A DNA stretch of 64,000 bases. Origin: Macrostomum lignano (taxonomy: Eukaryota). The notes beneath the pieces are model-generated. The model was given only the letters and a program-made list of their open reading frames with translations. It ran no database searches and was not told the origin of the DNA. Location of the stretch: positions 372,001 to 436,000 of the forward strand of contig NIVC01000173.1 of assembly GCA_002269645.1 (NCBI GenBank), read 5' to 3'. A program made the translations under genes and the position numbers. Shown here one piece after another: positions 5,721 to 49,357 of this stretch; within the stretch, counting starts at the first letter, position 1; the number at the start of each line of letters is the position of its first letter.

Positions 5721-5774
5721 CTGCGGGAGGGGCAGCGGCTCTTTAGATAGGGTACACAGATGGACATACATAGA

Positions 5775-5793
5775 GACAAACAGACAGACAGGC

Positions 5794-14801: not shown

Positions 14802-14816
14802 TGGCGACGAGGATGG
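14802..14816 (+). promoter_or_regulatory. Primer-binding site TGGCGACGAGGATGG (tRNA-Ser(GCU) 3' end)
   Basis: Starts 3 nt after the 5' LTR; complementary to the ...CCAUCCUCGUCGCCA 3' end of eukaryotic tRNA-Ser(GCU). Confidence 0.8.
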
Positions 14817-17800
14817 CCCTCAACAACGTGAACCCGCCAGCCCCGTTTCTGCCAGCAAGCGGATCGCCGGCAGTTCCATGGAATCGATGGCTCGATGCTT
14901 TCGATATATATTGCCAAGCCGTGCAAATCTGGACTCCAAGGCCAAAAGGAGAAGAAGCTCCGAGTCAGGAGGCTATGCGCCTGCAAACGGTGTGCCGAAA
15001 CATGCTGCTTCACTTGCTCGGTTTCGAAGGGCAGCGGATAGCTAAGGCTAGAAATGCAATTGCCGATGAGCAGACCTTTTGGCAAACTCGTGATCTGCTG
15101 ACGACTGTATTCGGTGACCGGCCGAATGTGATGCTGGCGCGCCACAGATTCCGGGAAAGACATCAGCTACCTGGAGAGGACGCAGCCACCTTTGTCGCAG
15201 CACTGCGAGAGCTGTCAGCGACCTGCAACTACGGTGTCCTGGTGGACGAAATGATTCGTGACCAGCTGGCCCAGAGGACGAGCAGCACCCGGATACGCGA
15301 GCGTCTTCTGACGGAGGACGCGGCTACGCTGACTCTGGACCGTGCCATCACGATCGCAACGACCATCGAGGACGCAGCAGCAGGAAGCAAGGCGATGGCA
15401 GCCACAAGCTCGTCAGGAACAGTCCAGGCCGTTCAAGATGCAAAGCCTCGGGGCCAGCGCGGCACTCCGGCCAGCAAGAGACCCCAGCGCCAAGCCGGAG
15501 GGTCCTGTCTGCGATGCGGCCGTAGCCATGACGCGAAAGTGAAATGTCCCGCTCATGGCAAGAAGTGCAACAACTGCGGCAAGCTCAATCACTTCAGTCG
15601 ATGCTGCCGCAGCAAGGCTCTGCAGGTCAGCACAGAGGACACGGTTACGATTTACTCGGTGCACGGCAATGGCGAGATCAGAGTCGCGTTACAACTGGGT
15701 GGCAGCCAGAAGATTGTCAACCTGATGGTCGACTGCGGGGCCAAGGTGTCCCTGCTCAGCGAAGCCACAGCAAAGACTCTAGACAACTTGGAGCTAAGAC
15801 CTTCAGCAATGCAGCTAAAAGCTTACGGCGGAAAGCAGATCTCACTGGCTGGGATTGCAAAGGTTGCCGTCAAGCACGAAAGTCGGGAGCTGCATCACGA
15901 TTTCTATATCTCGAGGTCGGGCGAAAACATCATTGGCCGTAACCTAATGGAAAAGCTAGGATTCCGGGTACAACTGCAGCCTCCGGAGGTTGAAAATAGT
16001 ATCGCCTGTGTAGACATAGCGGAGGAGTTCCCAGCGGTTTTCAGTGGTCTAATCGGACTCTGCAAAGGGGCGGTGCACAAGCCGAGAGTAAATGCAGCTG
16101 TGCTACCAGTGCAGCAGCCGCTACGCCGCCTTCCACTTGCAAAGCAACAGAAAGTAGGCAATGAACTTGACCGCATGGAGGCAGCGGGCATCATTGAACG
16201 AATAAACTCCAGCCCGTGGATATCCAACCTGGTTGTTGCAAACAAGAAAGACGGCAACATTCGAATCTGCATCGACGTGCGAGAGCCGAATAAGTCGCTC
16301 GTAATCGATCGACATCCGATGCCTCAGCTGGACGAGATTTCGGCAAAGATCAAGGCAGCAAGTGGCCGCGTATTTTCAAAGATCGATCTCAAAGCTGGCT
16401 ACATGCAGATGCAGTTGCATGAGGCATCGCGTGACTACAGCATTCATCACGCACCAGGGGTTGTATCGGTATTTGCAGAGTGCCGTTCGGCTTAGCGTCA
16501 GCGCCAGCAGCCTTCCAAAGGATGCTGGACGACTTAGTAGCCGGACTTCACGGTGTCGAACATATTCTGGACGATTTCATTGTTTTCGGAGCAAACATGA
16601 CTGAACATGATTCAAGACTGCGAGCGCTATTAGGGCGTATGAACGACGCTGGCCTAACGGCCAATAAGGACAAATGCCTGCTGCGCAAGACGGAGGTAGA
16701 ATTTTTCGGCTTCATCTTCTCAGCCGACGGTATTCGACCTTCAGAGTCCCAGACCAAGGCATTCAGCCAGTTGCGCTCACCGTCTAACCGGAAGGAGCTG
16801 CAGGCGTTCCTAGGATCTGCAAACTACCTGATGCGCTTTGTACCCAATTTTGCTGAAGTCACAGCGCCTCTGAGGGCCCTACTGAAGGGGGATGCGGAGT
16901 TCGAGTGGTCGACGGACTGCGAAAGAGCATTCCAAGAGCTAAAAGCAGCAATCTGTAATCCACCGATCCTGGCGCATTTTGACCCAGAGGCCGAGACGAT
17001 TGTCACCAGCGACGCTAGTGCGGATTCTCTCGGTGCACAGCTATCCCAGGTCCAAGACGGCGTCGAGCGTCCAATCGCCTTTGCCGCCCGAGCCTTGACC
17101 GACACCGAGAAGCGATACGCTGCAAATGAGCGGGAGGCATTGGCCAGTCTGTGGGCCATGGAGAAGTGGCACTACTACCTATATAGGCGTCACTTTGAGC
17201 TGCGAACAGACCATCAAGCGCTACGTCAACTACTGTTGGGACCTAGCGGTACGGGACATCGGCCGCTGCGCATCCACCGCTGGTGCGACAGGTTTCAACA
17301 GTACGATTTCCACGTAAAATATCTGCCAGGCAATCGGAACTTCGTGGCCGACATGTTGTCAAGATGGAGCTGTGGGTCGGACATGAATATCGTACAGCTA
17401 CTGGACACTGCGATGCCTCGAGTGCGAGTAGTAACACCTACCCAGCTAGCGACAGCCACAGCCGAGGACACGGTTCTGCGCGAGGTGATTCAGCGAGTGA
17501 CTAGCGGCAACTGGGGCTCAACGAAGGACACAGAGTTGCATCCGTTCTTCAAAGTCAGAGAACACCTCAGCGTTTGGCAGGATGGCACCTGCCTGGCTTT
17601 CCAAGAGCGAGCAGTCATTCCACATCAGCTGCGGCGTAACCTACTGGAATCGGCGCACACCGGACATCCGGGTGTGGTTCGCACTAAGCAGCAGCTCCGC
17701 GAGTTTGCCTGGTGGCCAAAGATGGACTGCGACGTCGAAATGTTTGTCAGAAACTGCAGTGCCTGCGAGACCGCAGAAAAGAATTCTAAATTGCGACCGG

Positions 17801-18777
17801 CTCCTCTGCAGCCTCTGCGGTGGCCAGATAGGCCGTGGACACAGATTGCCATCGACATCGTGGGTGAGCTACAGGCAGCACCAGCATCGTCACGATTCCT
17901 TCTGGTCATTACGGATCTGCATAGTAAATGGCCGGAAGTATTTGCAACGTCAAACATCACCACCGAGACGATCTGCAAAGTCTTACGCAGCCTGTTCGCA
18001 CGCTGGGGCCTCTGCGAGACGGTGCTTACCGACAACGGACCGCAGTTCGGCAATGCGCTCACGGGGTTCCTGCGGGAGCGCGGCATCCAGCACCAGAAGA
18101 CCAGCCCGTACCGTCCGAGCACGAACGGTCAGACGGAGAGGCTCAACCGGACTCTGGTAGACAGCATACGAGCGGCCAGGGCAGAGAATGTCCCAATGCA
18201 AGACGCGTTGCTGCAATTCCTTGAGACCTACCGCAGTACGCCGCACGCGCTGACTGGCAAGAGTCCAGCAGAGCTGATGCTAGGAAGACGTTGGCGCACT
18301 GCACTGTCTTTACTGGCTCCGTCTAAGGACACTACGGCGGCACGACCAGATATCGCCCAGCGAATTCGGGAGAGACAGCAGCGAACGGCAGCTTATACCG
18401 ACCGGCGGCGGAAGGCGCGACCACCAACATTGTGCGCCGGTGACTGGGTTCGAGTGCGTCGTCCAGTGCGAAACGGGAAGCTGGGGACGCGGCTCTCTGG
18501 ACCACTACAGATCGTGAAGACAACGAACGCCGTGTGTAGGCTAACGGACGGCAGCACCTGGAATCAGCAGGCGCTTGTACCAACGTCTCTGCGGCCGAAT
18601 TCTGAGCCACCAGGGCCAAATGAGCTTGACCCCCTCGTGGACATTCAAAGACAACAACCTGCACAATGCGGGGGAGAGACCAACGTTCAAATACCAGGAC
18701 CAGCCTCGGGACCTGCGACTCCACCGCTGAGACGTTCGAACCGTCAACGGCGACCGGTGCAACGTTACGGCTGGTGA
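14813..18777 (+). CDS. Gypsy gag-pol polyprotein, frameshifted in RT near 16440-16480
   Basis: Two Cys/His knuckles (CLRCGRSH...CNNCGKLNH), protease VDCG, RT HILDD, RNase H TSDAS/TDH, integrase HHCC plus D-D-E (AID, TDNG, TERLN). The reading frame shifts twice within about 40 bp. Confidence 0.93.
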
Positions 18778-27839: not shown

Positions 27840-28675
27840 CAGGGCGCCAAAATGAGTGCCTATCTGTTGCGCGAAAATGAGTGCCTGACTGCGGCGCCAA
27901 AATAAGTGCCTGTGGCGCCAAGGTGAGTGCCTGTCTGCGGCGCCAAAACAAGTGCCTGTGGCGCTAAAACAAGTGCCTGTGGCTGCAAAAAGAGTTCCTG
28001 CCTGTGGCGCCAAAACAAGTGCCTGTGGCGCCAAAATGAGTGCCTGTGGCGCCAAAATGAGTGCCTGTGGCGCCAAAATGAGTGCCTGCCTGTGGCGCCA
28101 AAATGAGTGCCTGCCAGCGGCGCCAAAAAAGTGCCTGTGGCGCCAAAAAAAGTGCCTGTGGCGCCAAAACAAGTGCCTGTGGCGCCAAAATGAGTGCCTG
28201 TGGCGCCAAAATGAGTGCCTGCCTGTGGCGCCAAAATGAGTGCCTGCCTGTGGCGCCAAAATGAGTGCCTGCCAGCGGCGCCAAAACAAGTGCCTGTGGC
28301 GCCAAAATGAGTGCCTGCCAGCGGCGCCAAAACAAGTGCCTGTGGCGCCAAAATGAGTGCCTGCCTGTGGCGCCAAAATGAGTGCCTGCCTGTGGCGCCA
28401 AAATGAGTGCCTGCCTGTGGCGCCAAAATGAGTGCCTGCCTGTGGCGCCAAAATGAGTGCCTGCCTGTGGCGCCAAAATGAGTGCCTGCCTGTGGCGCCA
28501 AAATGAGTGCCTGCCTGTGGCGCCAAAATGAGTGCCTCCCTGTGGCGCCAAAATGAGTGCCTGCCTGTGGCGCCAAAATGAGTGCCTGCCTGTGGCTCCA
28601 AAATGAGTGCCTGCCAGCGGCGCCAAAACAAGTGCCTGTGGCGCCAAAATGAGTGCCTGCCTGTGGCGCCAAAAT
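27840..28675 (+). repeat. 17/21-bp composite minisatellite (TGTGGCGCCAAAATGAGTGCC[TGCC])n
   Basis: About 40 units, each with the palindrome GGCGCC. Confidence 0.95.
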
Positions 28676-28977
28676 CACCGCTATTTGTTGCTAAAAACGC
28701 CGACTCCCAAAATAATTTAAGAAATTTCTCGTGTAGAATTCTTAGCTCTGTCTTTTGTAATGGCCATAGACAGTTTGCCGATTAACTGAAATTGACATTG
28801 CATGCCCTCTACGCTGCAGTGTATAACCCCTGCACAAGCCTGCTAGCATTCAGGCGCACGCACCGCAGGCGTGATAGTTGACAGCTTTTAATCAGATTTG
28901 AATTTGTCCGCCCCAATCTAAATGTATGAGTAGCAGACATGTGCATTGACGCTATTTTTATAGTCACACAAATTTCT

Positions 28978-28984
28978 TATAAAA
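28978..28984 (+). promoter_or_regulatory. Candidate TATA box for the peptide gene
   Basis: TATAAAA about 25-30 nt upstream of a TCAT initiator-like motif and 68 nt upstream of the ATG. Confidence 0.45.
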
Positions 28985-29051
28985 CCGAAAGCAACCTCTC
29001 GCTCATAGATAAAATACGTCTGTAAAGTTTTTGTTTGAATTGACACAAAAA

Positions 29052-29300
29052 ATGAAACTTAAAATCTTTCTAATAGTTGGCTGTCTTGTTGCCATCTGCT
29101 GTCAGCCAGTCACTGTGGATTGCCGACCAGCTTCTGTCAATCGTCGGAATGTTCGCCACGAGGCGTCGTCTTCAGCTGCAACCGCGGAGCTCCTGCCGCG
29201 ACAGCGCCGAGGCGCCGAGATTCAAATCCTGCAGGCGATGCTGTGCAAATATTATCGCCGAGAGAGACTAAAACTGCCAAAATCCTGCAAGTCTGACTAA
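29052..29300 (+). CDS. Secreted prepropeptide, 82 aa, single exon, family unknown
   Basis: aaaATG; signal peptide MKLKIFLIVGCLVAICCQPVTVDC; propeptide ending in the furin site RQRR; 29-aa mature peptide with 2 Cys; GC-rich island within AT-rich flanks. Confidence 0.8.
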   Translation: MKLKIFLIVGCLVAICCQPVTVDCRPASVNRRNVRHEASSSAATAELLPRQRRGAEIQILQAMLCKYYRRERLKLPKSCKSD

Positions 29301-29852
29301 TTGCAATCATGGGAATACTGATTTATGTTCGACTTTCACTGATTTCGATTTCGTAGTTTAAGGCTACCCGTGTAATAACAATTAAGGGCAAGCATTATTG
29401 CTAAGATCTAGGTAACAAGTACACATATAGTAGTATAATCCAACAGTTTAAATTTTAACAAAATTTTGAACAAAACTTGATTAAATTCAGCTGCACTCGA
29501 AATATTCGTAATCGTCAGCACTTGAGAGCTGACGCAAATCCACGTATTTATTAACTTTTTTGTTTAAAATTTTATCTAAATAAACTTCAAGATGAATAGC
29601 GCTCATCTGCCTTCAGATAATTTATCAGTAGCAAAATTTGCATTTCTCATTATTTCTATTTTCTGTATACTATAATGTTTGAAAACTTTTTTTACAAAAC
29701 TTTTATTTCAATGCTTTGCTTGTGTTTGAGCAATAGACCATTTAAGACAGTGTTTGCTGTTTCTTCTAAAAGCGAATTTCCAGCTTTTTGGTGTTGAGCA
29801 TGCGCTGCACAATTGGTAGCCCATAGAAGCAATTACCTGGTCGAGAAATTTA

Positions 29853-29853
29853 C

Positions 29854-29915
<62 letters not shown>

Positions 29916-29936
29916 TGGCGGACAGACAGACAGACA
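29853..29936 (+). repeat. (CAGA)n microsatellite
   Basis: Direct reading. Confidence 0.95.
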
Positions 29937-30151
29937 GTAACAAACAGTTACTTAGTTAGCTAGTTAGTTAGTTAGTAGATAGCGAGAAAGAGCGAGCGAA
30001 GCGAGCTCTTTCGAGCTTGCTTGCCGCAGCCAATCAAGCTGAAAGCACGCACACAAGATCACCGGAAACGATTAAGGCAGCTGGAAAGCCAATGGGCGCG
30101 GTAAGCGCTTTTATCCAGAGGAACTACCTGCTGGAACCAGCCATGCCGTAC

Positions 30152-30588
<437 letters not shown>

Positions 30589-30859
30589 TAGTTCAAGGTG
30601 ACAGTTGTTCCGCAGACAGCAAGTAGGCAAGCAGCCATACTCGTACCACCTTTGCTATCCCTTGAGCTGGCACACGCGCATGGATGCGTCATGGACAACT
30701 ACTTACGTACTTTCGTCCTTTAGTAGTTGACCATGGATAAAAAGGCACGTACAAGGGCTCACAAATGGTAAACAGCGGCCCCGCCGTTCTTATCGTCAGG
30801 AATTTACACCCTCTTGCACCAGCGGGTCGGGCCCGCATGAGTCAGAAGCCAATTTGAAA

Positions 30860-31026: not shown

Positions 31027-31420
31027 GCATGAGAATGAGCTGGCATGAGAATGAGCTGGCATGAGAATGAGCTGGCATGAGAATGAGCTGGCATGAGAAT
31101 GAGCTGGCATGAGAATGAGCTGGCATGAGAATGAGCTGGCATGAGAATGAGCTGGCATGAGAATGAGCTGGCATGAGAATGAGCTGGCATGAGAATGAGC
31201 TGGCATGAGAATGAGCTGGCATGAGAATGAGCTGGCATGAGAATGAGCTGGCATGAGAATGAGCTGGCATGAGAATGAGCTGGCATGAGAATGAGCTGGC
31301 ATGAGAATGAGCTGGCATGAGAATGAGCTGGCATGAGAATGAGCTGGCATGAGAATGAGCTGGCATGAGAATGAGCTGGCATGAGAATGAGCTGGCATGA
31401 GAATGAGCTGGCATGAGAAT
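31027..31420 (+). repeat. 16-bp minisatellite (GCATGAGAATGAGCTG)n
   Basis: About 24 nearly perfect units. Confidence 0.97.
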
Positions 31421-31424
31421 GAGA

Positions 31425-31730: not shown

Positions 31731-32594
31731 GGCGTATTTATACAGAAAAAGTAAGCATTGAGCCCCTTGCCCTCAATTTTACCCCTATAAACAAATACAA
31801 ATTATAACTAACCAAATCGTCATTTAAAGTAGTGGATAATAAAGAAATAATTAAACGCAATGCTCAAATAGTTGACGATTTTGCATAATCGGGAACCCAT
31901 ATATCTTTTGCCAACTGTAGCTAGCAGGGAAGAAGACTTTCACTAAAAAAAGGGATGTGAACTGAACATCATATAAACGGAAGTGACACAGAGGATTTAT
32001 GCCATAATGCTATAGTTTACCTTTTTGACAGTATAGAAATACAATACATGGTGCAGAGTTTCGCTGCTTCCAGAGCATCTAAACAAATTTACACAGTGCG
32101 GACACCTGAGATGTGAGGCACAGCTAATAGCTATATGCAGTTAGAGGAGTTGAAGGTACATGTATGAAAAACGCCTTTTTAAATTTTTGTCAAGCTTAAA
32201 CTGCTTCCCAAAGTATAGAAACCAAAAGCAGAAAAAATCGATGCAGCTAAAGGTGTAACGAAAAGAGCCCGAGAGGAAAGTCTGATAAAATGGAAATTCC
32301 CAGTTACAAGCACAGAGGCCTGCAGCAGAATAAATAATTCAGTGAATTAAACAATACCCTCGAGACAAAGCATCGCTTCAAATCTATCCAAATTAAGGCA
32401 TTTAAATTATTTACATTGCATTCCATGCTCACTTTATTAACATGTGCTCAGTTTCTCACCGTCTATAGGCACGCATGAGCACCAAGGAGAGAGAGAGCTT
32501 GCAAAGCAACAGCATAAATACGAACAGCTTGAATCCAGCGAGACTGTTGCTGCAACACGAGTTGAAATTTCGATACAGCAGCTTCTCATTGAGA

Positions 32595-33359
32595 ATGCTT
32601 CTCTTGAAAATTGCATGCTTAACTGATGACATCTTGCTGCATCTTCTGCTGGCGAGCATGCAGCTGCTGGCGGTGCGGGTCCTGGCGTGCCCAGCACCGT
32701 TCCTCACCGAAGCCACCAAGTGCGTGTTCGTGCAGAAGGCGCAGAGCTACAGTTGGTGCGACTCCAATCGGCAGTGCGCATCGATTGGAGGCGAGCTTAT
32801 CAACTCGTACAGCTCGCTGAAACTTCTCAACAACATGTCAAGCGTTGATTACCGCTACAACTTGTGGCTTGGAGTGACCGACTTGGCTGATGAGAGGAAT
32901 TTGAGCAGGACTGGCTGGCAACTTGTCAATGGCCGTGGAGTCCTACCTCTGGACAATGCCCTGTGGTACAGCCATCAGCCCAGTAACGTAATCGGAGTGC
33001 AAGACTGCATTGTGCAGATTGCCGACCGCAGCTCCATTGGAGATGACGAATGCAGCAAGCAATTCGGATTCGTGTGCGAATGGACCGCCTCTCCGTCCGG
33101 GCCGCTCGCCATCGCCGTGTGGAAGCGAGATCCGTTCAAGCGCACCAGCTACAACCCCAGCTCTGACTATTGCCACACTGACCTGCTGCAGGTGAAGAGC
33201 CTCATCGATTGCATGGCGGCTGCGATGCGTTCTGGAAACAGCAAAACCGTTCTCTACAACTCTAAACTGAGACAGTGCCGTCTGCTGCAGTTCACCGACG
33301 CTCAGGTCGAAGAGGCGATCGAGACGAGCGCCGACTGGGTCAAGTACAGCATCTTCTGA
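32595..33359 (+). CDS. C-type lectin domain plus PAN/apple-like domain secreted protein, copy 1 (start uncertain: 32475, 32595 or 32658)
   Basis: CTLD motifs (CVFV, WCDSNRQCASIGGEL, LWLG, DC...C...FGFVCE) followed by SLIDC...YNSKLRQCRL; intronless; signal-like N-terminus. Confidence 0.85.
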   Translation: MLLLKIACLTDDILLHLLLASMQLLAVRVLACPAPFLTEATKCVFVQKAQSYSWCDSNRQCASIGGELINSYSSLKLLNNMSSVDYRYNLWLGVTDLADERNLSRTGWQLVNGRGVLPLDNALWYSHQPSNVIGVQDCIVQIADRSSIGDDECSKQFGFVCEWTASPSGPLAIAVWKRDPFKRTSYNPSSDYCHTDLLQVKSLIDCMAAAMRSGNSKTVLYNSKLRQCRLLQFTDAQVEEAIETSADWVKYSIF

Positions 33360-34410: not shown

Positions 34411-35313
34411 ACACTTCATAAATTAATCTGTGTAATCTTCAATAAAGGTCTCAATGCCTCTATTGAAGTTTAGGTTAGATCTAAACTCATTCCCCATAAA
34501 AAATGTCCCCCACACTAAACCCCCCATGTACTACATTAGCAGCCCATGCGTATGTGTAAGAAATCATCTATTATATTTTCATTTATTGTGCTTGTGGTAG
34601 TTCAACTAAAACTGGCAAACATTCTGCTATAGACACTTCTCATACATTTCAATTCAGCGAAACATGAGCACTCTTCGATTTTTGTCGATAATTTTACTCT
34701 ACAAAACTGCATGCAAACTGAGTAAACAGCTGCAGTTTGAGTGGCTACTCCCTTCTGAATAAATCGATCGCTATGCTGACATTTCCGAAGCTGGTGATAA
34801 ACAGTAAATGAGAGTACAGGAGTGTAGTCCCTGGTGCTGGCGCCCCTTGGTGCTGGCTCCTTGTTGCCTGCCATGGAATCTATAACAAGGCACATTGTTT
34901 TCCAACTTATCTCAGCTACTTGCAATTTTGCAGCGTCTCAACTGCAACTGTAGCAAGCGTGTCAATACTGGAATTCTTCTGAATTCAGAATTCTTCGTCA
35001 AACACAGGAAATGCGTATTGAATTTCTGCTAGCTTATTGATTGCAGCCTCTGCTAAAAGCAAATACTGTAAAAATCACCTGAGAAACCGAAGCTAAACAA
35101 CAAATGTTTCGACACTGCAGCCTGAAAACCATGAATCATACAGCAAACATGCTTCACGGATGCTCTACAAAGTCTGTATGGAAAGAGGCGGATGGAGACA
35201 ATACGTGAGCCAATAGGCAGCTCTAGATGAGAACTGTCAAATATATAAACCATCCCAGCAACAGTCGTGTGTGCCCCAAGCCGAAGCCTAAAGGGTCTCC
35301 AATAATTGTTGAC

Positions 35314-36039
35314 ATGCAGGTCTCAGTGCTGCTGGCAAGCATACAGCTGCTGGCGGTGCGGGTCTTTTCGTGCCCTGCACCGTTCATAACCGAAGCCACC
35401 AAGTGCGTGTTCGTGCAGACGACGCAGAACTTCAACTGGTGCGACGCCAATCGGCAGTGCGCATCGATCGGAGGTGAGCTCATCAACTCGTACAGCTCGC
35501 TGAAACTTCTCAACAACATGCCAACCGTTACCAGCTGCGAATGCCATCTGTGGCTCGGAGTGACCGACTTGGCTGATGAGAGGAATTTGAGCAGGACCGG
35601 CTGGCAACTTGTTAATGATCGTGGAGTCCTGCCTCTAAACGAGTCCATGTGGCTTTTTAACCGGCCATATTACACTACTAGAGACTGCATCATTCAGATT
35701 GCCCACCAAAAAAAACTTGGAGACGAGGACTGCAGCAAGCGATTCGGATTCGTGTGCGAATGGACCGCCTCTCCGTCCGGGCCGCTCGCCATCGCCGTGT
35801 GGAAGCGAGATCCGTTCAAGCGCACCAGCTACAACCCCAGCTCTGATTACTGCCACACTGACCTGCTGCAGGTGAAGAGCCTCATCGATTGCATGGCGGC
35901 TGCGATGCGTTCTGGAAACAGCAAAAACGTTCTCTACAACTCTAAACTGAGACAGTGCCGTCTGCTGCAGTTCACCGACGCTCAGGTCGAAGAGGCGATC
36001 GAGACGAGCGCCGACTGGGTCAAGTACAGCATCTTCTGA
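35314..36039 (+). CDS. C-type lectin domain plus PAN/apple-like domain secreted protein, copy 2
   Basis: gacATG; signal MQVSVLLASIQLLAVRVFS; paralog of copy 1 with the same stop context. Confidence 0.88.
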   Translation: MQVSVLLASIQLLAVRVFSCPAPFITEATKCVFVQTTQNFNWCDANRQCASIGGELINSYSSLKLLNNMPTVTSCECHLWLGVTDLADERNLSRTGWQLVNDRGVLPLNESMWLFNRPYYTTRDCIIQIAHQKKLGDEDCSKRFGFVCEWTASPSGPLAIAVWKRDPFKRTSYNPSSDYCHTDLLQVKSLIDCMAAAMRSGNSKNVLYNSKLRQCRLLQFTDAQVEEAIETSADWVKYSIF

Positions 36040-40687: not shown

Positions 40688-40771
40688 ATGAAGCCAAAAG
40701 TTAAGGGTTTGAAATTTTTTCCACCAAAGAAAGAACTGGAAAACAAACCTGTACCTAAGACTGAACCACAT
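40688..40771 (+). CDS. Nucleolin-like multi-RRM protein, exon 1
   Basis: aagATG, Lys-rich frame, CAT|gtgagt donor. Confidence 0.75.
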
Positions 40772-40799
40772 GTGAGTTGCATTCAATATTCATGCCTGT

Positions 40800-40859
40800 C
40801 TGTCTATCTGTCTATCTATCTAGCTATCTATCTATCTATCTATATATCTATCTATCTAG

Positions 40860-40895
<36 letters not shown>

Positions 40896-40960
40896 TTATA
40901 TATCTCTCCATCTATCTATCTATCTGTCTATCTACCTATCTATCTATCTTTCAAATCTAT
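40800..40960 (+). repeat. (TATC)n microsatellite in intron 1
   Basis: Direct reading. Confidence 0.95.
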
Positions 40961-41022
40961 CTATCCAACACATAGTAAACATGTTGCCTTGTACAAACAA
41001 TTCAACTACGATCGGTTTGCAG

Positions 41023-41311
41023 GTTCCCACACAGCTGATCGAAGACACGGCGGCCAAGCAGCTAAAACATGAGAAACTGTCCAAGTTGAAGTTAAAAAAA
41101 TCCGAGAAAATTAAGCAGCTGCTTTTGCAAAAGAAAAAAGAAAAAAAACTGCAGCTGCAGTTGGAGAAGACCGAGCCCTCAAAGAAAGTGAATGAGCCGA
41201 TTAAAAAAAGTTTGCCAGAATCGGAGCAGACTAAGAAGAAGCTCAAGCAAGCAAAAGCGCCTTTGGCAGTCAAGGCGGCTAAACCAGTCAAGGCTAACGG
41301 ATCTACTACAG
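41023..41311 (+). CDS. Nucleolin-like protein, exon 2 (Lys-rich)
   Basis: tttgcag acceptor and G|gtagag donor (phase 1). Confidence 0.8.
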
Positions 41312-41422
41312 GTAGAGTAATTTGTTAATTAATTATATCTACCTTAGGGTTGGGGCTTGGTTTGTGATCCATGCACATTAGGAGACCAACCGCCAACATA
41401 GTCTTTCCGTTTCCATTTTTAG

Positions 41423-41613
41423 CAACAACAACCGCAGCAGCAGTAGCAGAAAAAAGCAGCCAATCCACTACAATCGAACCAGTTCGAGATCCGCTTCTGA
41501 GAGCCGAAATTGCCGACTATCTTCGGCGAAGGTCGGCGTGCACCGTTCGAGTTCGTCGGGTACCGAATAGACTGCGGTTTAAACAGATTGGACAGCTGTG
41601 CTCTGGGATTCAG
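41423..41613 (+). CDS. Nucleolin-like protein, exon 3 (start of RRM1)
   Basis: ttttag acceptor, CAG|gtaggg donor; TVRVRRVP RNP2-like motif. Confidence 0.8.
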
Positions 41614-41639
41614 GTAGGGATTTCCCCAAGTATTTGATC

Positions 41640-42480
41640 GGTGAGTGAGTACCCCAATCGAATCCTCAGTGACTGAGTGAGTACCCCAATCGAATCCTCA
41701 GTGACTGAGTGAGTACCCCAATCGAATCCTCAGTGACTGAGTGAGTACCCCAATCGAATCCTCAGTGACTGAGTGAGTACCCCATCCAATCCTGAGTGAG
41801 TACCACATCCAATCCTGAGTGAGTACCCCATTCAATCCTGAGTGAGAAAGTGAGTGAGTACCCCACCCAATCCTGAGTGAGAAAGTGAGTGAGTACCCCA
41901 CCCAATCCTGAGTGAGAAAGTGAGTGAGTACCCCATCCAATCCTGAGTGAGAAAGTGAGTGAGTACCCCATCCAATCCTGAGTGAGAAAGTGAGTGAGTA
42001 CCCCACCCAATCCTGAGTCAGTGAGTGAGTACCCCACCCAATCCTGAGTCAGTGAGTGAGTACCCACCCAATCCTGAGTGAGAAAGTGAGTGAGTACCCC
42101 ATCCAATCCTGAGTGAGAAAGTGAGTGAGTACCCCACCCAATCCTGAGTCAGTGAGTGAGTACCCCACCCAATCCTGAGTCAGTGAGTGAGTACCCACCC
42201 AATCCTGAGTCAGTGAGTGAGTACCCACCCAATCCTGAGTCAGTGAGTGAGTACCCACCCAATCCTGAGTCAGTGAGTGAGTACCCCACCCAATCCTGAG
42301 TCAGTGAGTGAGTACCCACCCAATCCTGAGTCAGTGAGTGAGTACCCCACCCAATCCTGAGTCAGTGAGTGAGTACCCCACCCAATCCTGAGTCAGTGAG
42401 TGAGTACCCCACCCAATCCTGAATCAGTGAGTCAGTACCCCATCCAATCCTGAGTCAGTGAGTCAGTAGCTACCCTATCC
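41640..42480 (+). repeat. 31/35-bp minisatellite (GTGAGTGAGTACCCCACCCAATCCTGAGTCA)n in intron 3
   Basis: About 25 units. Confidence 0.95.
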
Positions 42481-42558
42481 AATCCCAATGAGTGCCCAGT
42501 ATAGAAGGCGTAATACTTGGCCAGAAACTTCCCAATCGCCCCATCCGCCTCGCTGCAG

Positions 42559-43044
42559 GCCTACCGAGTCCCCTGGAACTACGCCGCCGGCCGGCACAAA
42601 GGCGTCGCTTTCTTAGAATTCGCTAGCCCCGAAGCCGCTAAACGAGCGGCCACAGAGATTTCATCGAATAAAACTCTGGGCTTCCGTCTGACCGCCGCTA
42701 TTCAAGGCGTATTTGGCGAGGATGATGATGCCGAGATGCAGCAGACTCAGCAGCAGCAGCAGCAGCAGCAGCAAGCCGACGGCTCAGCCGATCGTCACGA
42801 CGAAGACGCTTTCGCTGGCAACGTTGACGCTTACAATTGTCGCCGGGTGATTGTGTGCGGACTGCACCCCTTCACCACTGGCCAGGAGCTGAAAGATCTG
42901 GTCAGTCAGAATCTGTCCAACACTACGGTTGAACGCGTGGATTTTCAGCACGGCAGTAAACAGTTGCGCAAGAATTCGCCTGCGGTTGCGTTTCTGACGT
43001 TCACTGACGAGAGACGGGCCTTGGAGGCTGTCAAGAAGCTGCAG
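42559..43044 (+). CDS. Nucleolin-like protein, exon 4 (RRM1 end, polyQ linker, RRM2)
   Basis: ctgcag acceptor; RNP1 motifs KGVAFLEF and AVAFLTF; CAG|gtttgt donor. Confidence 0.88.
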
Positions 43045-43094
43045 GTTTGTTGCGGGATATCAGGGATATTCATCATCAATCTGAGGCTTTGCTA

Positions 43095-44125
43095 GCCCTG
43101 AGGATCTGAAGCTGAACTAACCCCTGAGGATCTGAAGGTTACGTAACCGCTTGGGATCTGAAGCTTAACTAAACCCTGACTATCTGAAGCTGAACTAACC
43201 CCTGAGGATCTGAAGCTGAACTAACCCCTGAAGATCTGAAGCTGAACTAACCCCTGAAGATCTGAAGCTGAACTAACCCCTGAGGATCTGAAGCTGAACT
43301 AACCCCTGAGGATCTGAAGCTGAACTAACCCCTGAATATCTGAAGCTGAACTAACCCCTGAAGATCTGAAGCTGAACTAACCCCTGAGGATCTGAAGGTT
43401 ACGTAACCGCTTGAGATCTGAAGCTGAACTAACCCCTGAGGATCTGAAGCTGAACTAACCCCTGAGGATCTGAAACTGAACTAACCCCTGAGGATCTGAA
43501 GCTGAACTAACCCCTGAGGATCTGAAGCTGAACTAACCCCTGAAGATCTGAAGCTGAACTAACCCCTGAATATCTGAAGCTGAACTATCCCCTGAGGATC
43601 TGAAGCTGAACTAACCCCTGAGGATCTGAAGCTGAACTAACCCCTGAAGATCTGAAGCTGAACTAACCCCTGAATATCTGAAGCTGAACTAACCCCTGAG
43701 GATCTGAAGCTGAACTATCCCCTGAGGAACTGAAGCTGAACTAACCCCTGAGGATCTGAAGCTGAACTAACCCCTGAAGATCTGAAGCTGAACTAACCCC
43801 TGAATATCTGAAGCTGAACTAACCCCTGAATATCTGAAGCTGAACTATCCCCTGAGGATCTGAAGCTGAACTATCCCCTGAGGATCTGAAGCTGAACTAA
43901 CCCCTGAAGATCTGAAGCTGAACTAACCTCTGAGGATCTGAAGCTGAACTAACCCCTGAGGATCTGAAGGTTACGTAACCGCTTAGGATCTGAAGCTTAG
44001 CTAAACCCTGAGGATCTGAAGGTTAAGTAGCCCCTGAGTATCTGAAGGTCAAGTAGCCCCTGAGAATCTAAAGGTTAAGTAGCTTCTGAGGGTCTGAAGG
44101 TTAAGTAGCCCCTGAGGATCTGAAG
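43095..44125 (+). repeat. 26-bp minisatellite (CCCCTGAGGATCTGAAGCTGAACTAA)n in intron 4
   Basis: About 39 units. Confidence 0.95.
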
Positions 44126-44242
44126 CGGAAACAGCAACTTCCTCCGAGCCTGAATAAAGAACCGGCCATAAAGATGTTCATTGAGGACTACATGTAACTT
44201 AACTCTTACATCACGTGACCCATTGCCCCCTCCCCCCGTCAG

Positions 44243-44548
44243 GGTCAGGAAATCCGCGGCCGACTTACCAGCTGGATGCTGCACAAGCGACCCCTGCGAT
44301 CAGAGCATCAGCGCGATCGAACCCAACTAGTTGCTTTCGGAGTCTCCAAGCGCGTTACAGACGAGGATCTGCTGAAAGCGTTTCCCAATTCGAAGAGTAT
44401 CGACGTTAAACAGGGCCACGGCATGGCGGTGGTTACCTACGCTAGTGAGACCGACTGCAGGACCGACTTTGATGCTTGCAAAGGTGGCGTGGTTCAAATT
44501 GGCAAGGCTCGCCTTCGCGTTGAGTTTGGAGCTGCGCATCACAGACCG
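44243..44548 (+). CDS. Nucleolin-like protein, exon 5 (RRM3)
   Basis: Joins as AVKKLQ|GQEIRGR, a classic RRM end; GMAVVTY RNP1; CCG|gtgagc donor. Confidence 0.88.
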
Positions 44549-44566
44549 GTGAGCTACTCTGCGGTT

Positions 44567-45220
44567 TGATCCGGTGTCTTTTGGTCCCTGACTTCCAGAT
44601 TGGACTAGTCCTTGGGATCCGGTGTCTTTTGGTCCCTGACTTCCGGATTGGCCTAGTCCTTGGGATCCGGTGTCTTTTGGTCCCTGACTCCCGGATTGGC
44701 CTAGTCCTTGGGATCTTTTGTCTTTTGGTTCCCTGACTTCCAGATTGGCTTAGTCCTTGGGATCCGGTGTCTTTTGGTCCCTGACTTCCAGATTGGCTTA
44801 GTCCTTGGGATCCGGTGTCTTTTGGTCCCTGACTTCCAGATTGGCTTTGTCCTTGGGACCCGGTGTCTTTTGGTCCCTGACTTCCAGATTGGCCTAGTCC
44901 TTGGGATCTTGTGTCTTTTGGTCCCTGACTTCCAGATTGACCTAGTCCTTGGGATCCGGTGTCTTTTGGTTCCCTGACTTCCAGATTGGCCTAGTCCTTG
45001 GGATCCGGTGTCTTTTGGTCCCTGACTTCCAGATTGACCTAGTCCTTGGGATCTTGTGTCTTTTGGTCCCTGACTTCCAGATTGGCTTAGTCCTTGGGAT
45101 CCGGTGTCTTTTGGTCCATGACTTCAAGATTGAGTCATGATCCCATCGCTCTAATGTTTGGGATCCGGTGTCTTCTGATCCCTGACTTCAATATTAACCT
45201 AATCCCTGGGATCCGGTGTG
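44567..45220 (+). repeat. 48-bp minisatellite (GATCCGGTGTCTTTTGGTCCCTGACTTCCAGATTGGCCTAGTCCTTGG)n in intron 5
   Basis: About 12-13 units. Confidence 0.95.
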
Positions 45221-45271
45221 TTTTAAATATTTCTTTTAATTTCCCTAATGGGAAATCTCAACACCAAACAG

Positions 45272-45922
45272 GCCGAGGAGCGCAAGTCATCAGCCAACTC
45301 TTCTAAGAAGCAGCAAGAGCAGCAGCAGCAGCAGCAGCGTCTGCCTCGTCAGAAACCAGCCAAGCCAAAAAAGCCGCTAAACATTGACCCCAGCCTGTTC
45401 AACAAGTGTCAACTAGTTTTGAAAAATTTCAAGCCCAATACAAAAGACTCAGATTTGAGCAAATTCCTGCCGGGCACTAAACGCGTGTACTTTACTGGCA
45501 ACAGGCGGCTGGCATTCGTTCATTTCTCTAGCGAAACAGCCGCAGCCGAGGCCCTGGCCAAGATTGGCAAAGAACTATTGCATGGCTGCAAACTCAAGGC
45601 CATGTACGCCATGGACAAGCCGGATAAGAAAAAGGTTAAACAATTGCCGGCCACTACAAGCGGGAACGACATCGAACCGATGCAAGTTGAAGAAGAGTCT
45701 GTCATGGAAGCCGAAGGTGGCGCTGAACCAGCAGTTACTGAACACCAGCCAAAGCTGAAGAACAAGAAGAAAAAGTTCAAGCAGAAACCTGAAGCGTCTG
45801 CCGATGCTACTGCTGACTTCAAATTGCAGAAGAAAGCAGAGTTCAAGCCGGGCAATAAGAAAAAGAAGCTGTTTAAATTGTCCGATAAGAATAAGGAGGT
45901 TCAGCGAATGTTGAGAGCTTAG
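45272..45922 (+). CDS. Nucleolin-like protein, exon 6 (RRM4 and Lys-rich tail, stop)
   Basis: aaacag acceptor; LVLKNF RNP2 and RLAFVHF RNP1; TAG at 45922. Confidence 0.88.
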   Translation, partial: AEERKSSANSSKKQQEQQQQQQRLPRQKPAKPKKPLNIDPSLFNKCQLVLKNFKPNTKDSDLSKFLPGTKRVYFTGNRRLAFVHFSSETAAAEALAKIGKELLHGCKLKAMYAMDKPDKKKVKQLPATTSGNDIEPMQVEEESVMEAEGGAEPAVTEHQPKLKNKKKKFKQKPEASADATADFKLQKKAEFKPGNKKKKLFKLSDKNKEVQRMLRA

Positions 45923-46983: not shown

Positions 46984-47612
46984 TCACACGCCCTGCTGTC
47001 GCAGTCTACTCAGTTTCGGTTTGGTCTGCAGCCGATGCTCGGTGCTGTGCAGCAGTCCGTAAGCAAAGTAGATTAAAAATCCAATTGTCATCCATACTAG
47101 GAAGCGAAGCCAGGTACCGTTTGGCAGGGCCATCATCAGGTAGAGATTGACCAAAATTGACAGGCAAGGTAGAAATGGCACGCCTGGCACTTTGAATGCC
47201 ACCTTCTTTGCGCTCTGCGGTTGCATGCGCAAGCTGACAATGCACGCTAGGCAGACTAGAATTGACAAAGCCGCTGCCACAGCCACTCCCGGATTGCTTA
47301 GCTGGTCTGAACACCGCTCAAGTATGAATGCTAGAGCCGCCGCCGATGCCATGAATATGGCTGAATTACCTCTGGTCACCGTTTCTGATAACAGACTGGG
47401 CTGCTCGTCCGGCGCGTGCACTTTTATTGAGCAACGAATGTAGTCGCGAAAACTGGGCGCTTTATTGACAGCATTGATGGCATCTACCGACGGTTCGCCA
47501 TTTTTAGGTCTGACTGATGATGATTCGTCTACTATTAGTGCGGCTGGTTGTTGGCCATTCTCCTCGTCTTCGTTTGATGAACAGTCTTTGTAGTCTGGAG
47601 AATTTTCGGTTT
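46984..47612 (-). CDS. Cationic amino acid transporter (SLC7A1-4/CAT family), last exon; apparent +1 indel near 47480
   Basis: Phase-1 acceptor gccag|AA; C-terminal AA_permease motif FKVPGVPFLPCLSILVNLYLM...TWLRFLVWMTIGFLIYFAYG. The frame is restored by removing one C in GCCC. Confidence 0.85.
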
Positions 47613-47639
47613 CTGGCGATTAGTAGAGTGGAGAAGAAA

Positions 47640-48010
47640 TGAAGGGTGAAGAATGAAAAAAGAATGAAGGGTGAAGATAGGTGAAGGAGTGAAGGTTGAA
47701 GAGTGGAGAAGAAATGAAGGATGGAGAGTGGAAAAAATGAAGGGCAAAGAGTGGAGAAGGAGGAATGAAGGTTGATGGATGGAGCATGAAGGTTGAAGAG
47801 TGGAGGATGAATAAAGGTTGAAGAGCGGAGAAGGAGGAATGAAGGTTGATGGGTGGAGGAATGAAGGTTGATGGGTGGAGGAATGAAGGTTGACGAGTCG
47901 AGGAATGAAGGTTGGCGAGTAGAGGAATGAAGGTTGATGGGTGGAGGAATGAAGGTTGACGAGTCGAGGAATGAAGGTTGGCGAGTAGAGGAATGAAGGT
48001 TGAATAGTGC
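47640..48010 (+). repeat. Degenerate purine-rich ~22-bp repeat (GGAGGAATGAAGGTTGA...)
   Basis: Pyrimidine-rich on the transporter sense strand, filling its last intron. Confidence 0.85.
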
Positions 48011-48158
48011 AGAAGGAAGAATGGGTGAAGTGTGAAGATCGAATGAATGAAGGTTGAAGTTGAAATGGAGCTTAAATTAGCGAGAATAGTGAAGTACAGA
48101 ACAAAGAAAATCTTTGGAAAAGCAGGCAGGAGTAGCAATCAAGAGAGCAGGTCCTCAC

Positions 48159-48660
48159 CCTTCAGCGTCTCAGTCAGCTCATTCGATTGATCTCGTGTGC
48201 CGCGAAGAATGAGCACCGACAAGGCTACCAAAGTATAGGCTAGCAGTGTACCGATTGACATCATGTCCACCAGTTCCTTGAGCTCAAACAGGCAAGCCAT
48301 GATCCCGGCCATGCAGCCAGTGATCAGTGTGGCAATCATTGGCGTTGCTAGGCGAGGCTGCACTTTAGCTAGAAACCGGAATATCAGCCCGTCGGCGGCC
48401 ATGGCGTAGACAATCCGAGGCAGGGGAATCATTGAGCCCAGCAGGCTGGTTGACAGAGCGCAAACCGCTCCTACGGCTATCGCATAGTTGGCCACCTTCC
48501 AGCCGTAAGCGGCAAACGCCGCCGGCAGCGGCGCCAGCGGGTCCAGCGCGAAGTAGGGCAGCATCAGGGTGAGCACGGCGCTCAGACAGAAGTAGACTAC
48601 GAAACAGATGGACAGGCTCAGTATAATGCTGATTGGGATTGCTCGCTGCGGGTTCTTCAC
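48159..48660 (-). CDS. SLC7/CAT transporter exon
   Basis: [12 protein letters not shown]...[20 protein letters not shown]...[14 protein letters not shown]; AG/GT boundaries. Confidence 0.95.
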
Positions 48661-48674
48661 CTGTGTTAATTCAA

Positions 48675-48925
48675 GGGGTTGTAGCCTTGTGATTAGAGTG
48701 TTGGACTCACGAATTGAAGGTCGGGAGTTCGATTCTCGACCCAGTCGGAACAATTTGTGTCCTTGACAAAGAAAATTAACTCTGTATTGCTTCAGTTCTG
48801 GTACAGCTGTAAAATGGGTGCCAGCATTAGCTGGGGTAATTGGGGGTGTGTGGCGACCCCCAGTCCTTGGACTGAACAGCCGTACGCAGCCTTCGGATGA
48901 GTCGCGCAATAGCGGTTGGTCTGCC
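48675..48925 (+). mobile_element. CORE-type SINE, copy 3, in a transporter intron
   Basis: Aligns to copy 1 over the head, CORE and 3' part. Confidence 0.8.
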
Positions 48926-49357
48926 TCTGCCTCTTGCACATTATAAGTGGATTAGAAAATTATTAGTATTGTACGGGCAAGTCAAAACAAGGCTGAGATT
49001 CTGATGGTTTGCAATGCTTTGAGTCACAAAAGAGTTTGGTCTCGTGATCCACGTAAGGTATAGGTAGGGGGAGGGGCGTCTTGGGCGTTTCCGGGAATCC
49101 GGGAATAAAAAATCAAATAAACTGCTGAGACTGAGCTGCTCTTCCTCTTCAAATGATGATGTCGTGTCTTAATTAATTAAAGGCACATGTCAAGCTGCGA
49201 TATTGTGCTGGATGGTTCTTGTTATATTATGTTATTAAGACGTGAAATTTCGAGTTTATGAACCCATTCACAGGATATACACTCAATACTTCCCTGCATC
49301 TTCGTTCTGCATGTAACAAGCTGGATTGACTTTCTAAGACACCCAACGCCAGCTCAC

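What the first reader, a model, noticed from the sequence alone, without database searches (positions are those of the whole stretch)
29052..29300. Unassigned secreted peptide gene: signal peptide, furin site and a 29-aa disulfide-looped cationic peptide
Seen: an intronless 82-aa ORF with a TATA box. It has a signal peptide (…VTVDC|RPAS), an Ala/Ser spacer ending RQRR, and a predicted mature peptide GAEIQILQAMLCKYYRRERLKLPKSCKSD. That peptide has a hydrophobic N-terminal helix, a Cys12-Cys26 loop and net charge about +4 (7 K/R, 3 D/E). Established: R-X-R-R is the furin consensus, and this pre-pro layout is used by neurohormones, antimicrobial peptides and toxins. Inference: a novel bioactive peptide. 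I do not recognise the family, and it lies 3 kb from a tandem lectin cluster, which suggests a mucus/immune locus.
Basis: partly seen in the sequence, partly recalled or inferred. Interest (0 to 1): 0.72.

Follow-up and report, generated by a model that had tools for sequence, protein, structure and literature searches.

The report
Orphan flatworm secreted-peptide gene candidate
A small gene of the flatworm Macrostomum lignano, already deposited as an unnamed protein, looks like the precursor of a secreted 29-residue peptide, but it has no detectable relatives, so its function is still a guess.

Summary
Window 29052-29300 (+) is an uninterrupted 82-codon ATG ORF with a signal-peptide-like N-terminus. 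It has one R-X-R-R motif (RQRR, residues 50-53). The 29-residue tail has Cys12 and Cys26 and net charge +4.

The window is Macrostomum lignano contig NIVC01000173.1. The exact 82-aa protein is already a deposited GenBank/UniRef CDS. That annotation was built only from RNA-seq transcripts, so a transcript very probably exists.

Supporting signs are modest:
- The ORF is a 52% GC island in flanks of about 31-33% GC.
- Only the reading frame has a positive codon score.
- TATAAAA lies 74 nt upstream, and ATTAAA/AATAAA lie 180-280 nt downstream.

No relative was found anywhere: not in 5.8 billion clustered proteins, 1.84 billion representatives read exhaustively, Pfam, PDB, JGI metagenomes, or elsewhere in the window. 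Conservation of RxRR and the two Cys therefore could not be tested.

The predicted helix is not amphipathic, which argues against a classical helical antimicrobial peptide. The "lectin cluster" is just two tandem C-type lectin genes, with nothing linking them to the ORF.

Best reading: a taxon-restricted gene for a small secreted, convertase-processed peptide of unknown role. I put about 0.6 on it being really coding and about 0.4 on the whole chain. Interest is moderate to low.

The parts
28978..28984 (+). TATAAAA, a candidate TATA box 74 nt upstream of the ATG. A CA Inr-like dinucleotide at 29004-29005 lies 27 nt downstream of it.
   Evidence: It is the only TATAAA in 28700-29900. There are 29 on the + strand of the whole window, so this is weak evidence on its own.
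29052..29300 (+). Single-exon CDS: 82 codons plus TAA. It is a deposited hypothetical protein of M. lignano Mlig_3_7 (contig NIVC01000173.1, 401052-401300).
   Evidence: sources NCBI, UniRef, NCBI nr. GC is 52% against 31-33% in the flanks. Codon log-likelihood is +6.9 bits in frame, and -13 to -24 in the other five frames.
29052..29123 (+). Predicted signal peptide, residues 1-24. The n-region is MKLK, the h-region IFLIVGCLVAICC and the c-region QPVTVDC. Predicted cleavage is VDC|RP.
   Evidence: Kyte-Doolittle 10-residue maximum is 3.17. It is the only one of 65 ORFs of 82 aa or more to pass the crude signal-peptide filter. AF2 predicts a helix at 3-16. The cleavage site comes from the -3/-1 rule (inference); SignalP was not run.
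29124..29210 (+). Propiece, residues 25-53: RPASVNRRNVRHEASSSAATAELLPRQRR. Net charge is +5. It contains an extra dibasic site at R31-R32.
   Evidence: AF2 models it as disordered (pLDDT below 50).
29199..29210 (+). RQRR (residues 50-53), matching the furin / proprotein-convertase consensus R-X-[K/R]-R.
   Evidence: It is the only such motif in the protein. Actual cleavage is inferred, not shown.
29211..29297 (+). Predicted mature peptide, residues 54-82: GAEIQILQAMLCKYYRRERLKLPKSCKSD. Cys12 and Cys26 (residues 65 and 79), net +4, pI 9.5. Monoisotopic mass is 3437.81 Da with one disulfide. There is an internal RR at residues 69-70.
   Evidence: AF2 predicts a helix at 52-70 with pLDDT 56-69. 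The hydrophobic moment is not above shuffles.
29480..29485 (+). ATTAAA, a candidate variant polyadenylation signal 180 nt after the stop codon.
   Evidence: This is a motif match only.
29579..29584 (+). AATAAA, a candidate polyadenylation signal 279 nt after the stop codon.
   Evidence: There are 40 such hexamers on the + strand of the window, so this is weak evidence.

Best explanation
A transcribed, taxon-restricted ('orphan') single-exon gene of Macrostomum lignano that encodes a small secreted pre-pro-peptide.

Proposed mechanism, step by step:
1. Transcription starts from a TATA-type promoter about 45 nt upstream of the ATG (inferred).
2. The hydrophobic N-terminus directs co-translational entry into the ER, with signal-peptidase cleavage around residue 24 (inferred from sequence rules).
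3. One disulfide forms between Cys65 and Cys79 (inferred).
4. A furin or PC-type convertase cuts after RQRR53 (inferred from the motif).
5. This releases a basic 29-residue C-terminal peptide made of a hydrophobic helical head and a cationic disulfide loop.

The peptide would act outside the cell as a signalling or exocrine-gland peptide rather than as a pore-forming amphipathic helix. Exocrine candidates include neural or secretory-gland products, for example seminal-fluid-type peptides.

What is shown: the ORF, the motifs, the deposit as a CDS from an RNA-seq-only annotation, and the lack of relatives. Everything about secretion, processing and activity is inference.
For: - The ORF and its motifs are read directly from the sequence.
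- The exact protein is on record at exactly these coordinates on NIVC01000173.1, with sources NCBI, UniRef and NCBI nr.
- That GenBank annotation consists of StringTie/TACO transcripts with TransDecoder ORFs. Non-coding and repeat-overlapping transcripts were removed (PMC5730564).
- The ORF is a GC island (52% against about 31-33%). Its GC1 (0.60) exceeds GC2 (0.46), and total GC sits within the range of host exons in the window.
- The reading frame is the only one of six with a positive codon score.
- It is the only signal-peptide-like ORF among 65 of 82 aa or more. The chance expectation is 0.17 per window, and 0.007 for the full layout.
- The start context is AAAAATGA, TATAAAA lies at -74, and ATTAAA/AATAAA lie at +180 and +279.
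- AF2 gives helices at the signal peptide and at residues 52-70, with a disordered propiece.
- M. lignano is known to express many secreted proteins with no homologs: 31 of 76 prostate-limited transcripts had no BLAST hit and 38 of 65 had signal peptides (PMC5977470). Its reproduction-related genes evolve fast (PMC7336406).
Against: - No homolog or paralog was found at any level. This is despite a neopolyploid genome in which large parts are duplicated at 95% identity or more. There is therefore no evidence of purifying selection.
- The codon score is modest: 33% of all 60-120-aa ORFs in the window score as well. GC3 (0.51) is below most host genes here (0.59-0.73).
- A GC-rich stretch keeps all frames open. 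Three + frames and one - frame carry ORFs of 57-89 aa here.
- The layout filter is post hoc and predicts dozens of chance cases genome-wide.
- I could not view RNA-seq coverage, so the transcript is inferred from how the annotation was made.
- Two other dibasic sites (31-32 and 69-70) make the exact 29-mer uncertain.
- The structure model has low confidence (mean pLDDT 52).
Confidence: 0.4

Rival explanations
1. The ORF is a chance open reading frame in a short, GC-rich, weakly transcribed or non-coding transcript. TransDecoder simply promoted the longest ORF to a CDS, and no peptide is made.
For: - There is no relative anywhere, and no annotated duplicate in a largely duplicated genome.
- The codon score is unremarkable among the window's ORFs.
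- All + frames are open across the GC island.
- Genome-wide, the layout is expected dozens of times by chance.
- The locus is a 1.2-kb unique island between a 25-bp satellite and microsatellites, in a transposon-rich stretch.
Against: - The signal-peptide-like start, good ATG context, TATA and poly(A) motifs and GC island all coincide exactly with the ORF bounds.
- The frame is the only positive one of six.
- The annotators' filter removed transcripts judged non-coding.
Confidence: 0.3
2. It is a real secreted small protein, but not processed. Either it is secreted whole, as about 58-66 residues with up to two disulfides if the signal peptide is cut after Cys16 or Cys17. Or it is cut at the other dibasic sites (R31-R32, R69-R70), giving different products such as NVRHEASSSAATAELLP or a two-chain disulfide-linked peptide.
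For: - There are three dibasic sites, not one.
- Alternative signal-peptidase sites (AIC|C, ICC|Q) would leave four Cys in the secreted part (sequence).
- With no orthologs, it cannot be seen which segment is conserved.
Against: - RQRR is the only full R-X-[K/R]-R site.
- R69-R70 lies inside the predicted helix and disulfide loop, which should hinder cleavage.
- VDC|RP fits the -3/-1 rule best (inference).
Confidence: 0.15
3. It is a cationic antimicrobial or defence peptide, part of a mucus/immune locus together with the neighbouring lectins.
For: - Net charge is +4, with a C-terminal disulfide loop and a hydrophobic N-terminal segment.
- Two C-type lectin genes lie 3.4-6.7 kb downstream on the same strand.
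Against: - The helix is not amphipathic: the hydrophobic moment is 0.19-0.30, and 42-63% of shuffles reach that value.
- The loop has 13 residues between the Cys, unlike the short loops of Rana-box or nicomicin-type peptides (from my own knowledge).
- The propiece is basic rather than acidic.
- There are only two lectin genes. They are separated from the ORF by three repeat arrays, and there is no evidence of co-regulation.
Confidence: 0.07
4. It is one exon of a larger gene, or a remnant of a transposon or of a third lectin copy.
For: The surroundings are rich in LINE and LTR fragments, and the lectins are tandemly duplicated.
Against: - The deposited CDS is exactly this single exon.
- The ORF has its own ATG after an in-frame stop, and its own stop codon.
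- tblastn of the lectin finds only the two known copies, and the ORF matches nothing else in the window.
- There are no flanking inverted or direct repeats of note, and no Rfam or tRNA hits.
Confidence: 0.03

Closest known systems
Generic proprotein-convertase-processed prepropeptides (neuropeptide and peptide-hormone precursors, e.g. the planarian prohormones of Collins et al. 2010, PMC2953531)
   Same: Signal peptide, a spacer, a basic cleavage motif, a short C-terminal peptide, and a small single-exon gene. Planarian prohormones were likewise found by screening ORFs for a signal sequence plus dibasic sites.
   Different: There is no sequence relation to any flatworm prohormone in the databases. 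There is no amidation signal (no Gly before a basic site), there is only one peptide copy, and there is no peptidomic evidence.
C-terminal cyclic peptides of the somatostatin / allatostatin-C / urotensin II type
   Same: The bioactive peptide sits at the very C-terminus of the precursor, follows a basic site, and carries a single disulfide ring near the C-terminus (from my own knowledge; urotensin-like peptides in a mollusc: PMC3493602, listed but not read).
   Different: This ring has 13 residues between the Cys, against about 4-10 in those families. None of their core motifs is present, and there is no detectable similarity. It may work in a similar way, but it is not a member.
Helix-plus-disulfide-loop cationic antimicrobial peptides (frog 'Rana box' brevinin/esculentin type; polychaete nicomicin)
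   Same: An N-terminal helical segment, a C-terminal disulfide loop, net positive charge, and release from a precursor at a basic site (from my own knowledge).
   Different: The helix is not amphipathic, the loop is far longer, the propiece is basic rather than acidic, and there is no BRICHOS or conserved preproregion (Pfam found nothing).
Orphan secreted proteins of Macrostomum lignano gland cells (e.g. prostate-limited Mlig-pro transcripts, Weber et al. 2018, PMC5977470)
   Same: The same species, small secreted products, and no homologs outside the genus. This class is abundant and evolves fast.
   Different: The expression site of this gene is unknown. Its sequence is absent from the text-held supplements of that paper.

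Membership tests
Convertase-processed secreted prepropeptide (functional class, not a homology family) | N-terminal cleavable signal peptide | tested here: inconclusive
   It passes a crude n/h/c-region filter that 64 other ORFs of 82 aa or more fail, and a -3/-1 site is present. SignalP was not available.
Convertase-processed secreted prepropeptide (functional class, not a homology family) | R-X-[K/R]-R or dibasic site preceding the peptide | tested here: met
   RQRR at residues 50-53 is the only full motif. RR also occurs at 31-32 and 69-70.
Convertase-processed secreted prepropeptide (functional class, not a homology family) | The mature segment and cleavage site are better conserved than the propiece across orthologs | not testable with these tools
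   No ortholog or paralog was retrievable. Eukaryotic genomes and Macrostomum transcriptomes are not searchable here.
Convertase-processed secreted prepropeptide (functional class, not a homology family) | The processed peptide is detected in tissue | not testable with these tools
   This needs peptidomics. The expected mass is 3437.81 Da.
Somatostatin / allatostatin-C / urotensin-type cyclic peptides | Short disulfide ring with the family core motif, and detectable precursor similarity | tested here: not met
   The ring is C-x13-C. No hit appeared in the exhaustive phmmer search or in Pfam. Ring sizes of the known families are from my own knowledge.
Amphipathic-helix cationic antimicrobial peptides with a C-terminal loop | Amphipathic helix (high hydrophobic moment) | tested here: not met
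   The hydrophobic moment is 0.19-0.30. Between 42% and 63% of shuffles reach the observed value.
Amphipathic-helix cationic antimicrobial peptides with a C-terminal loop | Net cationic mature peptide | tested here: met
   Net +4, pI 9.5.
Insulin/relaxin-like peptides | B-chain and A-chain six-cysteine pattern | tested here: not met
   Only two Cys lie after the signal peptide and propiece, and there is no Pfam hit.
Macrostomum prostate-limited secreted proteins (Mlig-pro) | Expression limited to prostate gland cells | not testable with these tools
   No expression data are reachable. The sequence was not found in the held supplements of PMC5977470.
C-type lectin (the neighbouring genes, not the ORF) | Lectin_C domain | tested here: not met
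   The ORF has no Pfam hit. The neighbours at 32475-33359 and 35227-36039 do (E = 3e-8 and 4e-5). The ORF shows no similarity to them.

The most novel reading that the evidence does not exclude
A young, Macrostomum-restricted (possibly de novo) gene yields a previously unknown class of disulfide-looped cationic signalling peptide. One example would be a seminal-fluid or neurosecretory peptide that alters partner or tissue physiology, with no counterpart in other animals.
Probability: 0.25. Interest if true: 0.55.

Novelty: new member of a known kind. Interest (0 to 1): 0.3.

Why it matters
If it is real and processed, it would add a lineage-specific bioactive peptide to the one flatworm model with stable transgenesis. 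There its cell of origin, processing and function could be tested directly, and it would be a tidy case of an orphan gene acquiring a secretory pre-pro architecture. On its own it does not bear on any long-standing question. Orphan secreted proteins are already known to be common in this species, and the gene model is already public as a hypothetical protein.

Tried and rejected
- Homology searches with the 82-aa protein found only the protein itself. This covered the word-indexed search of 5.8 billion clusters and exhaustive phmmer over 1.84 billion representatives.
- Pfam found nothing.
- phmmer of the 29-mer against PDB at E up to 10 found nothing.
- Foldseek of the AF2 model against PDB found nothing, and the model is too weak to trust.
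- The back-translated scan of JGI metagenomes gave 599 pattern hits, none confirmed.
- tblastn and blastn of the ORF and locus within the window found no paralog.
- I tried to reach a homeologous locus through the neighbours. The lectin search returned only a UniRef-only protein (52% identity) and a 967-bp metagenome contig (60%), with no usable flanks. The RRM-gene exon search returned nothing. The conservation test therefore failed for lack of data, not because of a negative result.
- A full-text search for the peptide strings found 0 papers. The supplements of the seminal-fluid screen had 0 occurrences.
- Rfam, tRNA and repeat scans rule out a known RNA gene or a MITE-like structure.
- A third degenerate lectin copy at the ORF was rejected.
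- The amphipathic-helix antimicrobial reading was rejected on hydrophobic moment.

Full report
**What is in the sequence**

Window 29052-29300 (+) is an uninterrupted ORF of 82 codons plus TAA. Its translation is MKLKIFLIVGCLVAICCQPVTVDCRPASVNRRNVRHEASSSAATAELLPRQRRGAEIQILQAMLCKYYRRERLKLPKSCKSD.

- The N-terminus has a basic n-region (MKLK), a 13-residue hydrophobic core and a polar c-region. The c-region ends in V-D-C, which fits the -3/-1 rule.
- RQRR occupies residues 50-53 (nt 29199-29210) and is the only R-x-[K/R]-R in the protein.
- The tail is 29 residues with Cys at 12 and 26. It has 7 K/R and 3 D/E, so net charge is +4.
- TATAAAA lies at 28978-28984, 74 nt upstream of the ATG. ATTAAA lies at 29480 and AATAAA at 29579, 180 and 279 nt after the stop.

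- There are two further dibasic sites, R31-R32 and R69-R70. The second lies inside the proposed loop.
- The propiece is basic (net +5), not a neutral or acidic spacer.
- Four more Cys lie in or next to the signal peptide, at residues 11, 16, 17 and 24.

**Where it comes from**

The exact 82-aa protein is on record on contig NIVC01000173.1 of assembly GCA_002269645.1, at exactly the ORF coordinates and as a single-exon gene. [quoted passage not shown]

The sources holding the protein are NCBI, UniRef and NCBI nr. So it is a deposited GenBank CDS, not a call made by the database builders. It is the only gene recorded in the 20 kb around it.

The two obvious lectin ORFs next door are absent from the collection under any plausible start codon. 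So is the nucleolin-like RRM gene further on.

The paper explains this pattern. The GenBank annotation consists only of genome-guided RNA-seq transcripts (StringTie/TACO, cut by trans-splicing and poly(A) evidence) with TransDecoder ORFs. [quoted passage not shown]

The inference, which is not a direct observation, is that a repeat-free transcript covers this ORF and passed a coding-potential filter.

**Is it more than chance?**

Length is not informative. The window holds 65 ATG ORFs of 82 aa or more, mostly in transposons and repeats.

A crude signal-peptide filter required a K/R in residues 2-6, no D/E in the first 16, and a 10-residue hydrophobic window. It passes only this one of the 65.

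I also resampled the window in 500-bp blocks with a first-order Markov model, 300 times. The expected counts per window are:
- 0.43 signal-peptide-like ORFs of 60 aa or more;
- 0.17 of 82 aa or more;
- 0.007 for the whole layout of signal peptide, R-x-[KR]-R and an 8-60-aa tail with an even number of Cys.

That last filter was written after seeing the ORF. Over the roughly 12,000 windows of this genome it still predicts dozens of chance cases, so the layout alone does not settle the matter.

Independent intrinsic signs point the same way, but each is modest.
- The ORF is a GC island: 52% overall and up to 70% in its core, against about 31-33% in the flanks (170 nt upstream, 500 nt downstream). 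The island's edges coincide with the ORF's.
- Its total GC and its GC1 > GC2 pattern resemble the host exons of the window. Its GC3 (0.51) is lower than most of them, which range from 0.59 to 0.73.
- I built a codon table from about 1,960 codons of host genes in the window. With it, the reading frame scores +6.9 bits and the other five frames score -13 to -24. However, a third of all 60-120-aa ORFs in the window do as well.

**Relatives**

None were found.
- The word-indexed search of 5.8 billion protein clusters returned only the protein itself, with one member on one contig.
- An exhaustive phmmer read of 1.84 billion representatives likewise returned only itself at E of 0.001 or below.
- Pfam and PDB sequences at E up to 10 found nothing.
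- A back-translated scan of JGI metagenomes and tblastn/blastn within the window also found nothing.

This absence has to be read with care. Macrostomum is thinly represented in the databases I could reach. The neighbouring lectin, clearly a real gene, found only two relatives at 52-60% identity. One is a UniRef entry and the other a 967-bp metagenome contig. In addition, 29-residue peptides are below what HMMER can detect across phyla.

One point does count mildly against the gene. No annotated duplicate exists, although much of this neopolyploid assembly is duplicated at 95% identity or more.

I tried to reach the homeologous locus through the neighbouring genes. This failed because those neighbours are not annotated.

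**Structure and physical chemistry**

AlphaFold2 without an alignment gives a weak model (mean pLDDT 52). It shows a helix at residues 3-16 (the signal peptide), a disordered propiece, and a helix at residues 52-70 with pLDDT 56-69. Foldseek finds nothing.

The helix is not amphipathic. The hydrophobic moment is 0.19-0.30, a value that 42-63% of shuffles reach. Instead the peptide is polarised lengthwise, with a hydrophobic head (AEIQILQAML) and a cationic tail and loop (CKYYRRERLKLPKSC).

This argues against a classical membrane-lytic helical antimicrobial peptide. It fits a receptor ligand or a protein-binding peptide at least as well.

**Surroundings**

The ORF sits in a 1.2-kb unique island.
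- Upstream is a 25-bp satellite of 35 copies (27843-28675).
- Downstream are (ACAG)21, (GTTA)110 and a perfect 16-bp x 25 array.
- Further upstream are LINE-type reverse-transcriptase fragments and an LTR retrotransposon.

The 'tandem lectin cluster' is two paralogous genes, each with one C-type lectin domain (32475-33359 and 35227-36039, + strand). They are 80% identical in protein and about 90% in DNA over 1 kb, and there is no third copy.

Nothing links them functionally to the ORF. The 'mucus/immune locus' idea has no support beyond proximity.

No Rfam family, tRNA or terminal repeat structure overlaps the locus.

**Best explanation and likelihoods**

I consider it more likely than not (about 0.6) that this is a real, taxon-restricted protein-coding gene for a small secreted product.

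If so, cleavage at the only full convertase motif is the most economical processing scheme, and it would release the disulfide-bonded 29-mer (3437.81 Da). The whole chain has a probability of about 0.4.

The species is known to express many secreted proteins without homologs, notably in the prostate glands. There, 31 of 76 prostate-limited transcripts had no BLAST hit and 38 of 65 carried a signal peptide. Its reproduction-related genes also evolve fast. Such a gene would therefore be ordinary for this animal.

The rivals are:
- a chance ORF in a weak or non-coding transcript (about 0.3);
- a real secreted protein processed differently (about 0.15);
- an antimicrobial peptide tied to the lectins (about 0.07);
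- part of a larger gene or a transposon (about 0.03).

**Comparison with known systems**

In layout it works like any convertase-processed prepropeptide. In having its peptide at the precursor's C-terminus with a single ring, it resembles the somatostatin / allatostatin-C / urotensin type. It fails their membership tests on ring size, motif and similarity.

It also fails the amphipathicity test for helix-plus-loop antimicrobial peptides. Family ring sizes and propiece properties are from my own knowledge, not from a tool.

**Verdict**

The gene model is already public as an unnamed protein. Reading it as a peptide precursor is new but unproven. Interest is moderate to low until expression, conservation within Macrostomum and peptidomics are checked.

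Noticed in passing
window 27843-28675: A 25-bp satellite (consensus GGCGCCAAAATGAGTGCCTGCCTGT), about 35 copies at 84% match, directly upstream of the ORF's unique island. It creates long spurious ORFs on both strands.
   Followed up: no
window 29854-29937, 30152-30593, 31027-31423: Three simple-repeat arrays lie between the ORF and the lectin genes: (ACAG)21, (GTTA)110 and a perfect 16-bp unit x 24.8 (100% match).
   Followed up: no
window 32475-33359 and 35227-36039 (+): Two tandem, apparently intronless C-type lectin genes with a shared Cys-rich C-terminal domain. They are 80% identical in protein. Neither appears in the deposited annotation. The closest database proteins are only 52-60% identical: one M. 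lignano UniRef entry and one metagenome contig (ERZ27315224).
   Followed up: partly
window 40688-45922 (+): A multi-exon gene with RRM domains and lysine-rich, nucleolin-like stretches. Its introns are full of microsatellites. Its 224-aa last exon has no match at E of 1e-10 or below in the protein collection, so it too seems unannotated.
   Followed up: partly
window 46984-48939 and 63352-63873 (-), with 51194-56176 (+) and 56836-60334 (-) between: Exons of an amino-acid permease (cationic amino-acid-transporter-like) gene are separated by about 14 kb. That gap holds a LINE-type RT/RNase H element and an LTR-retrotransposon gag-pol, apparently insertions into an intron.
   Followed up: no
window 14813-18777 (+): An LTR-retrotransposon gag-pol (protease, RT, RNase H, integrase) split into two overlapping ORFs at about 16480-16495, which means a frameshift or a programmed shift.
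   Followed up: no
window 3430-5779 (-): Two exons of a Sad1/UNC (SUN-domain) protein gene, with a Ser/Ala-rich linker.
   Followed up: no
window 29452-29475 / 29558-29581: A 24-nt inverted repeat (83% complementary, 82 nt apart) in the putative 3' UTR of the ORF. Its 3' arm overlaps the AATAAA. It is AT-rich and may be chance.
   Followed up: no
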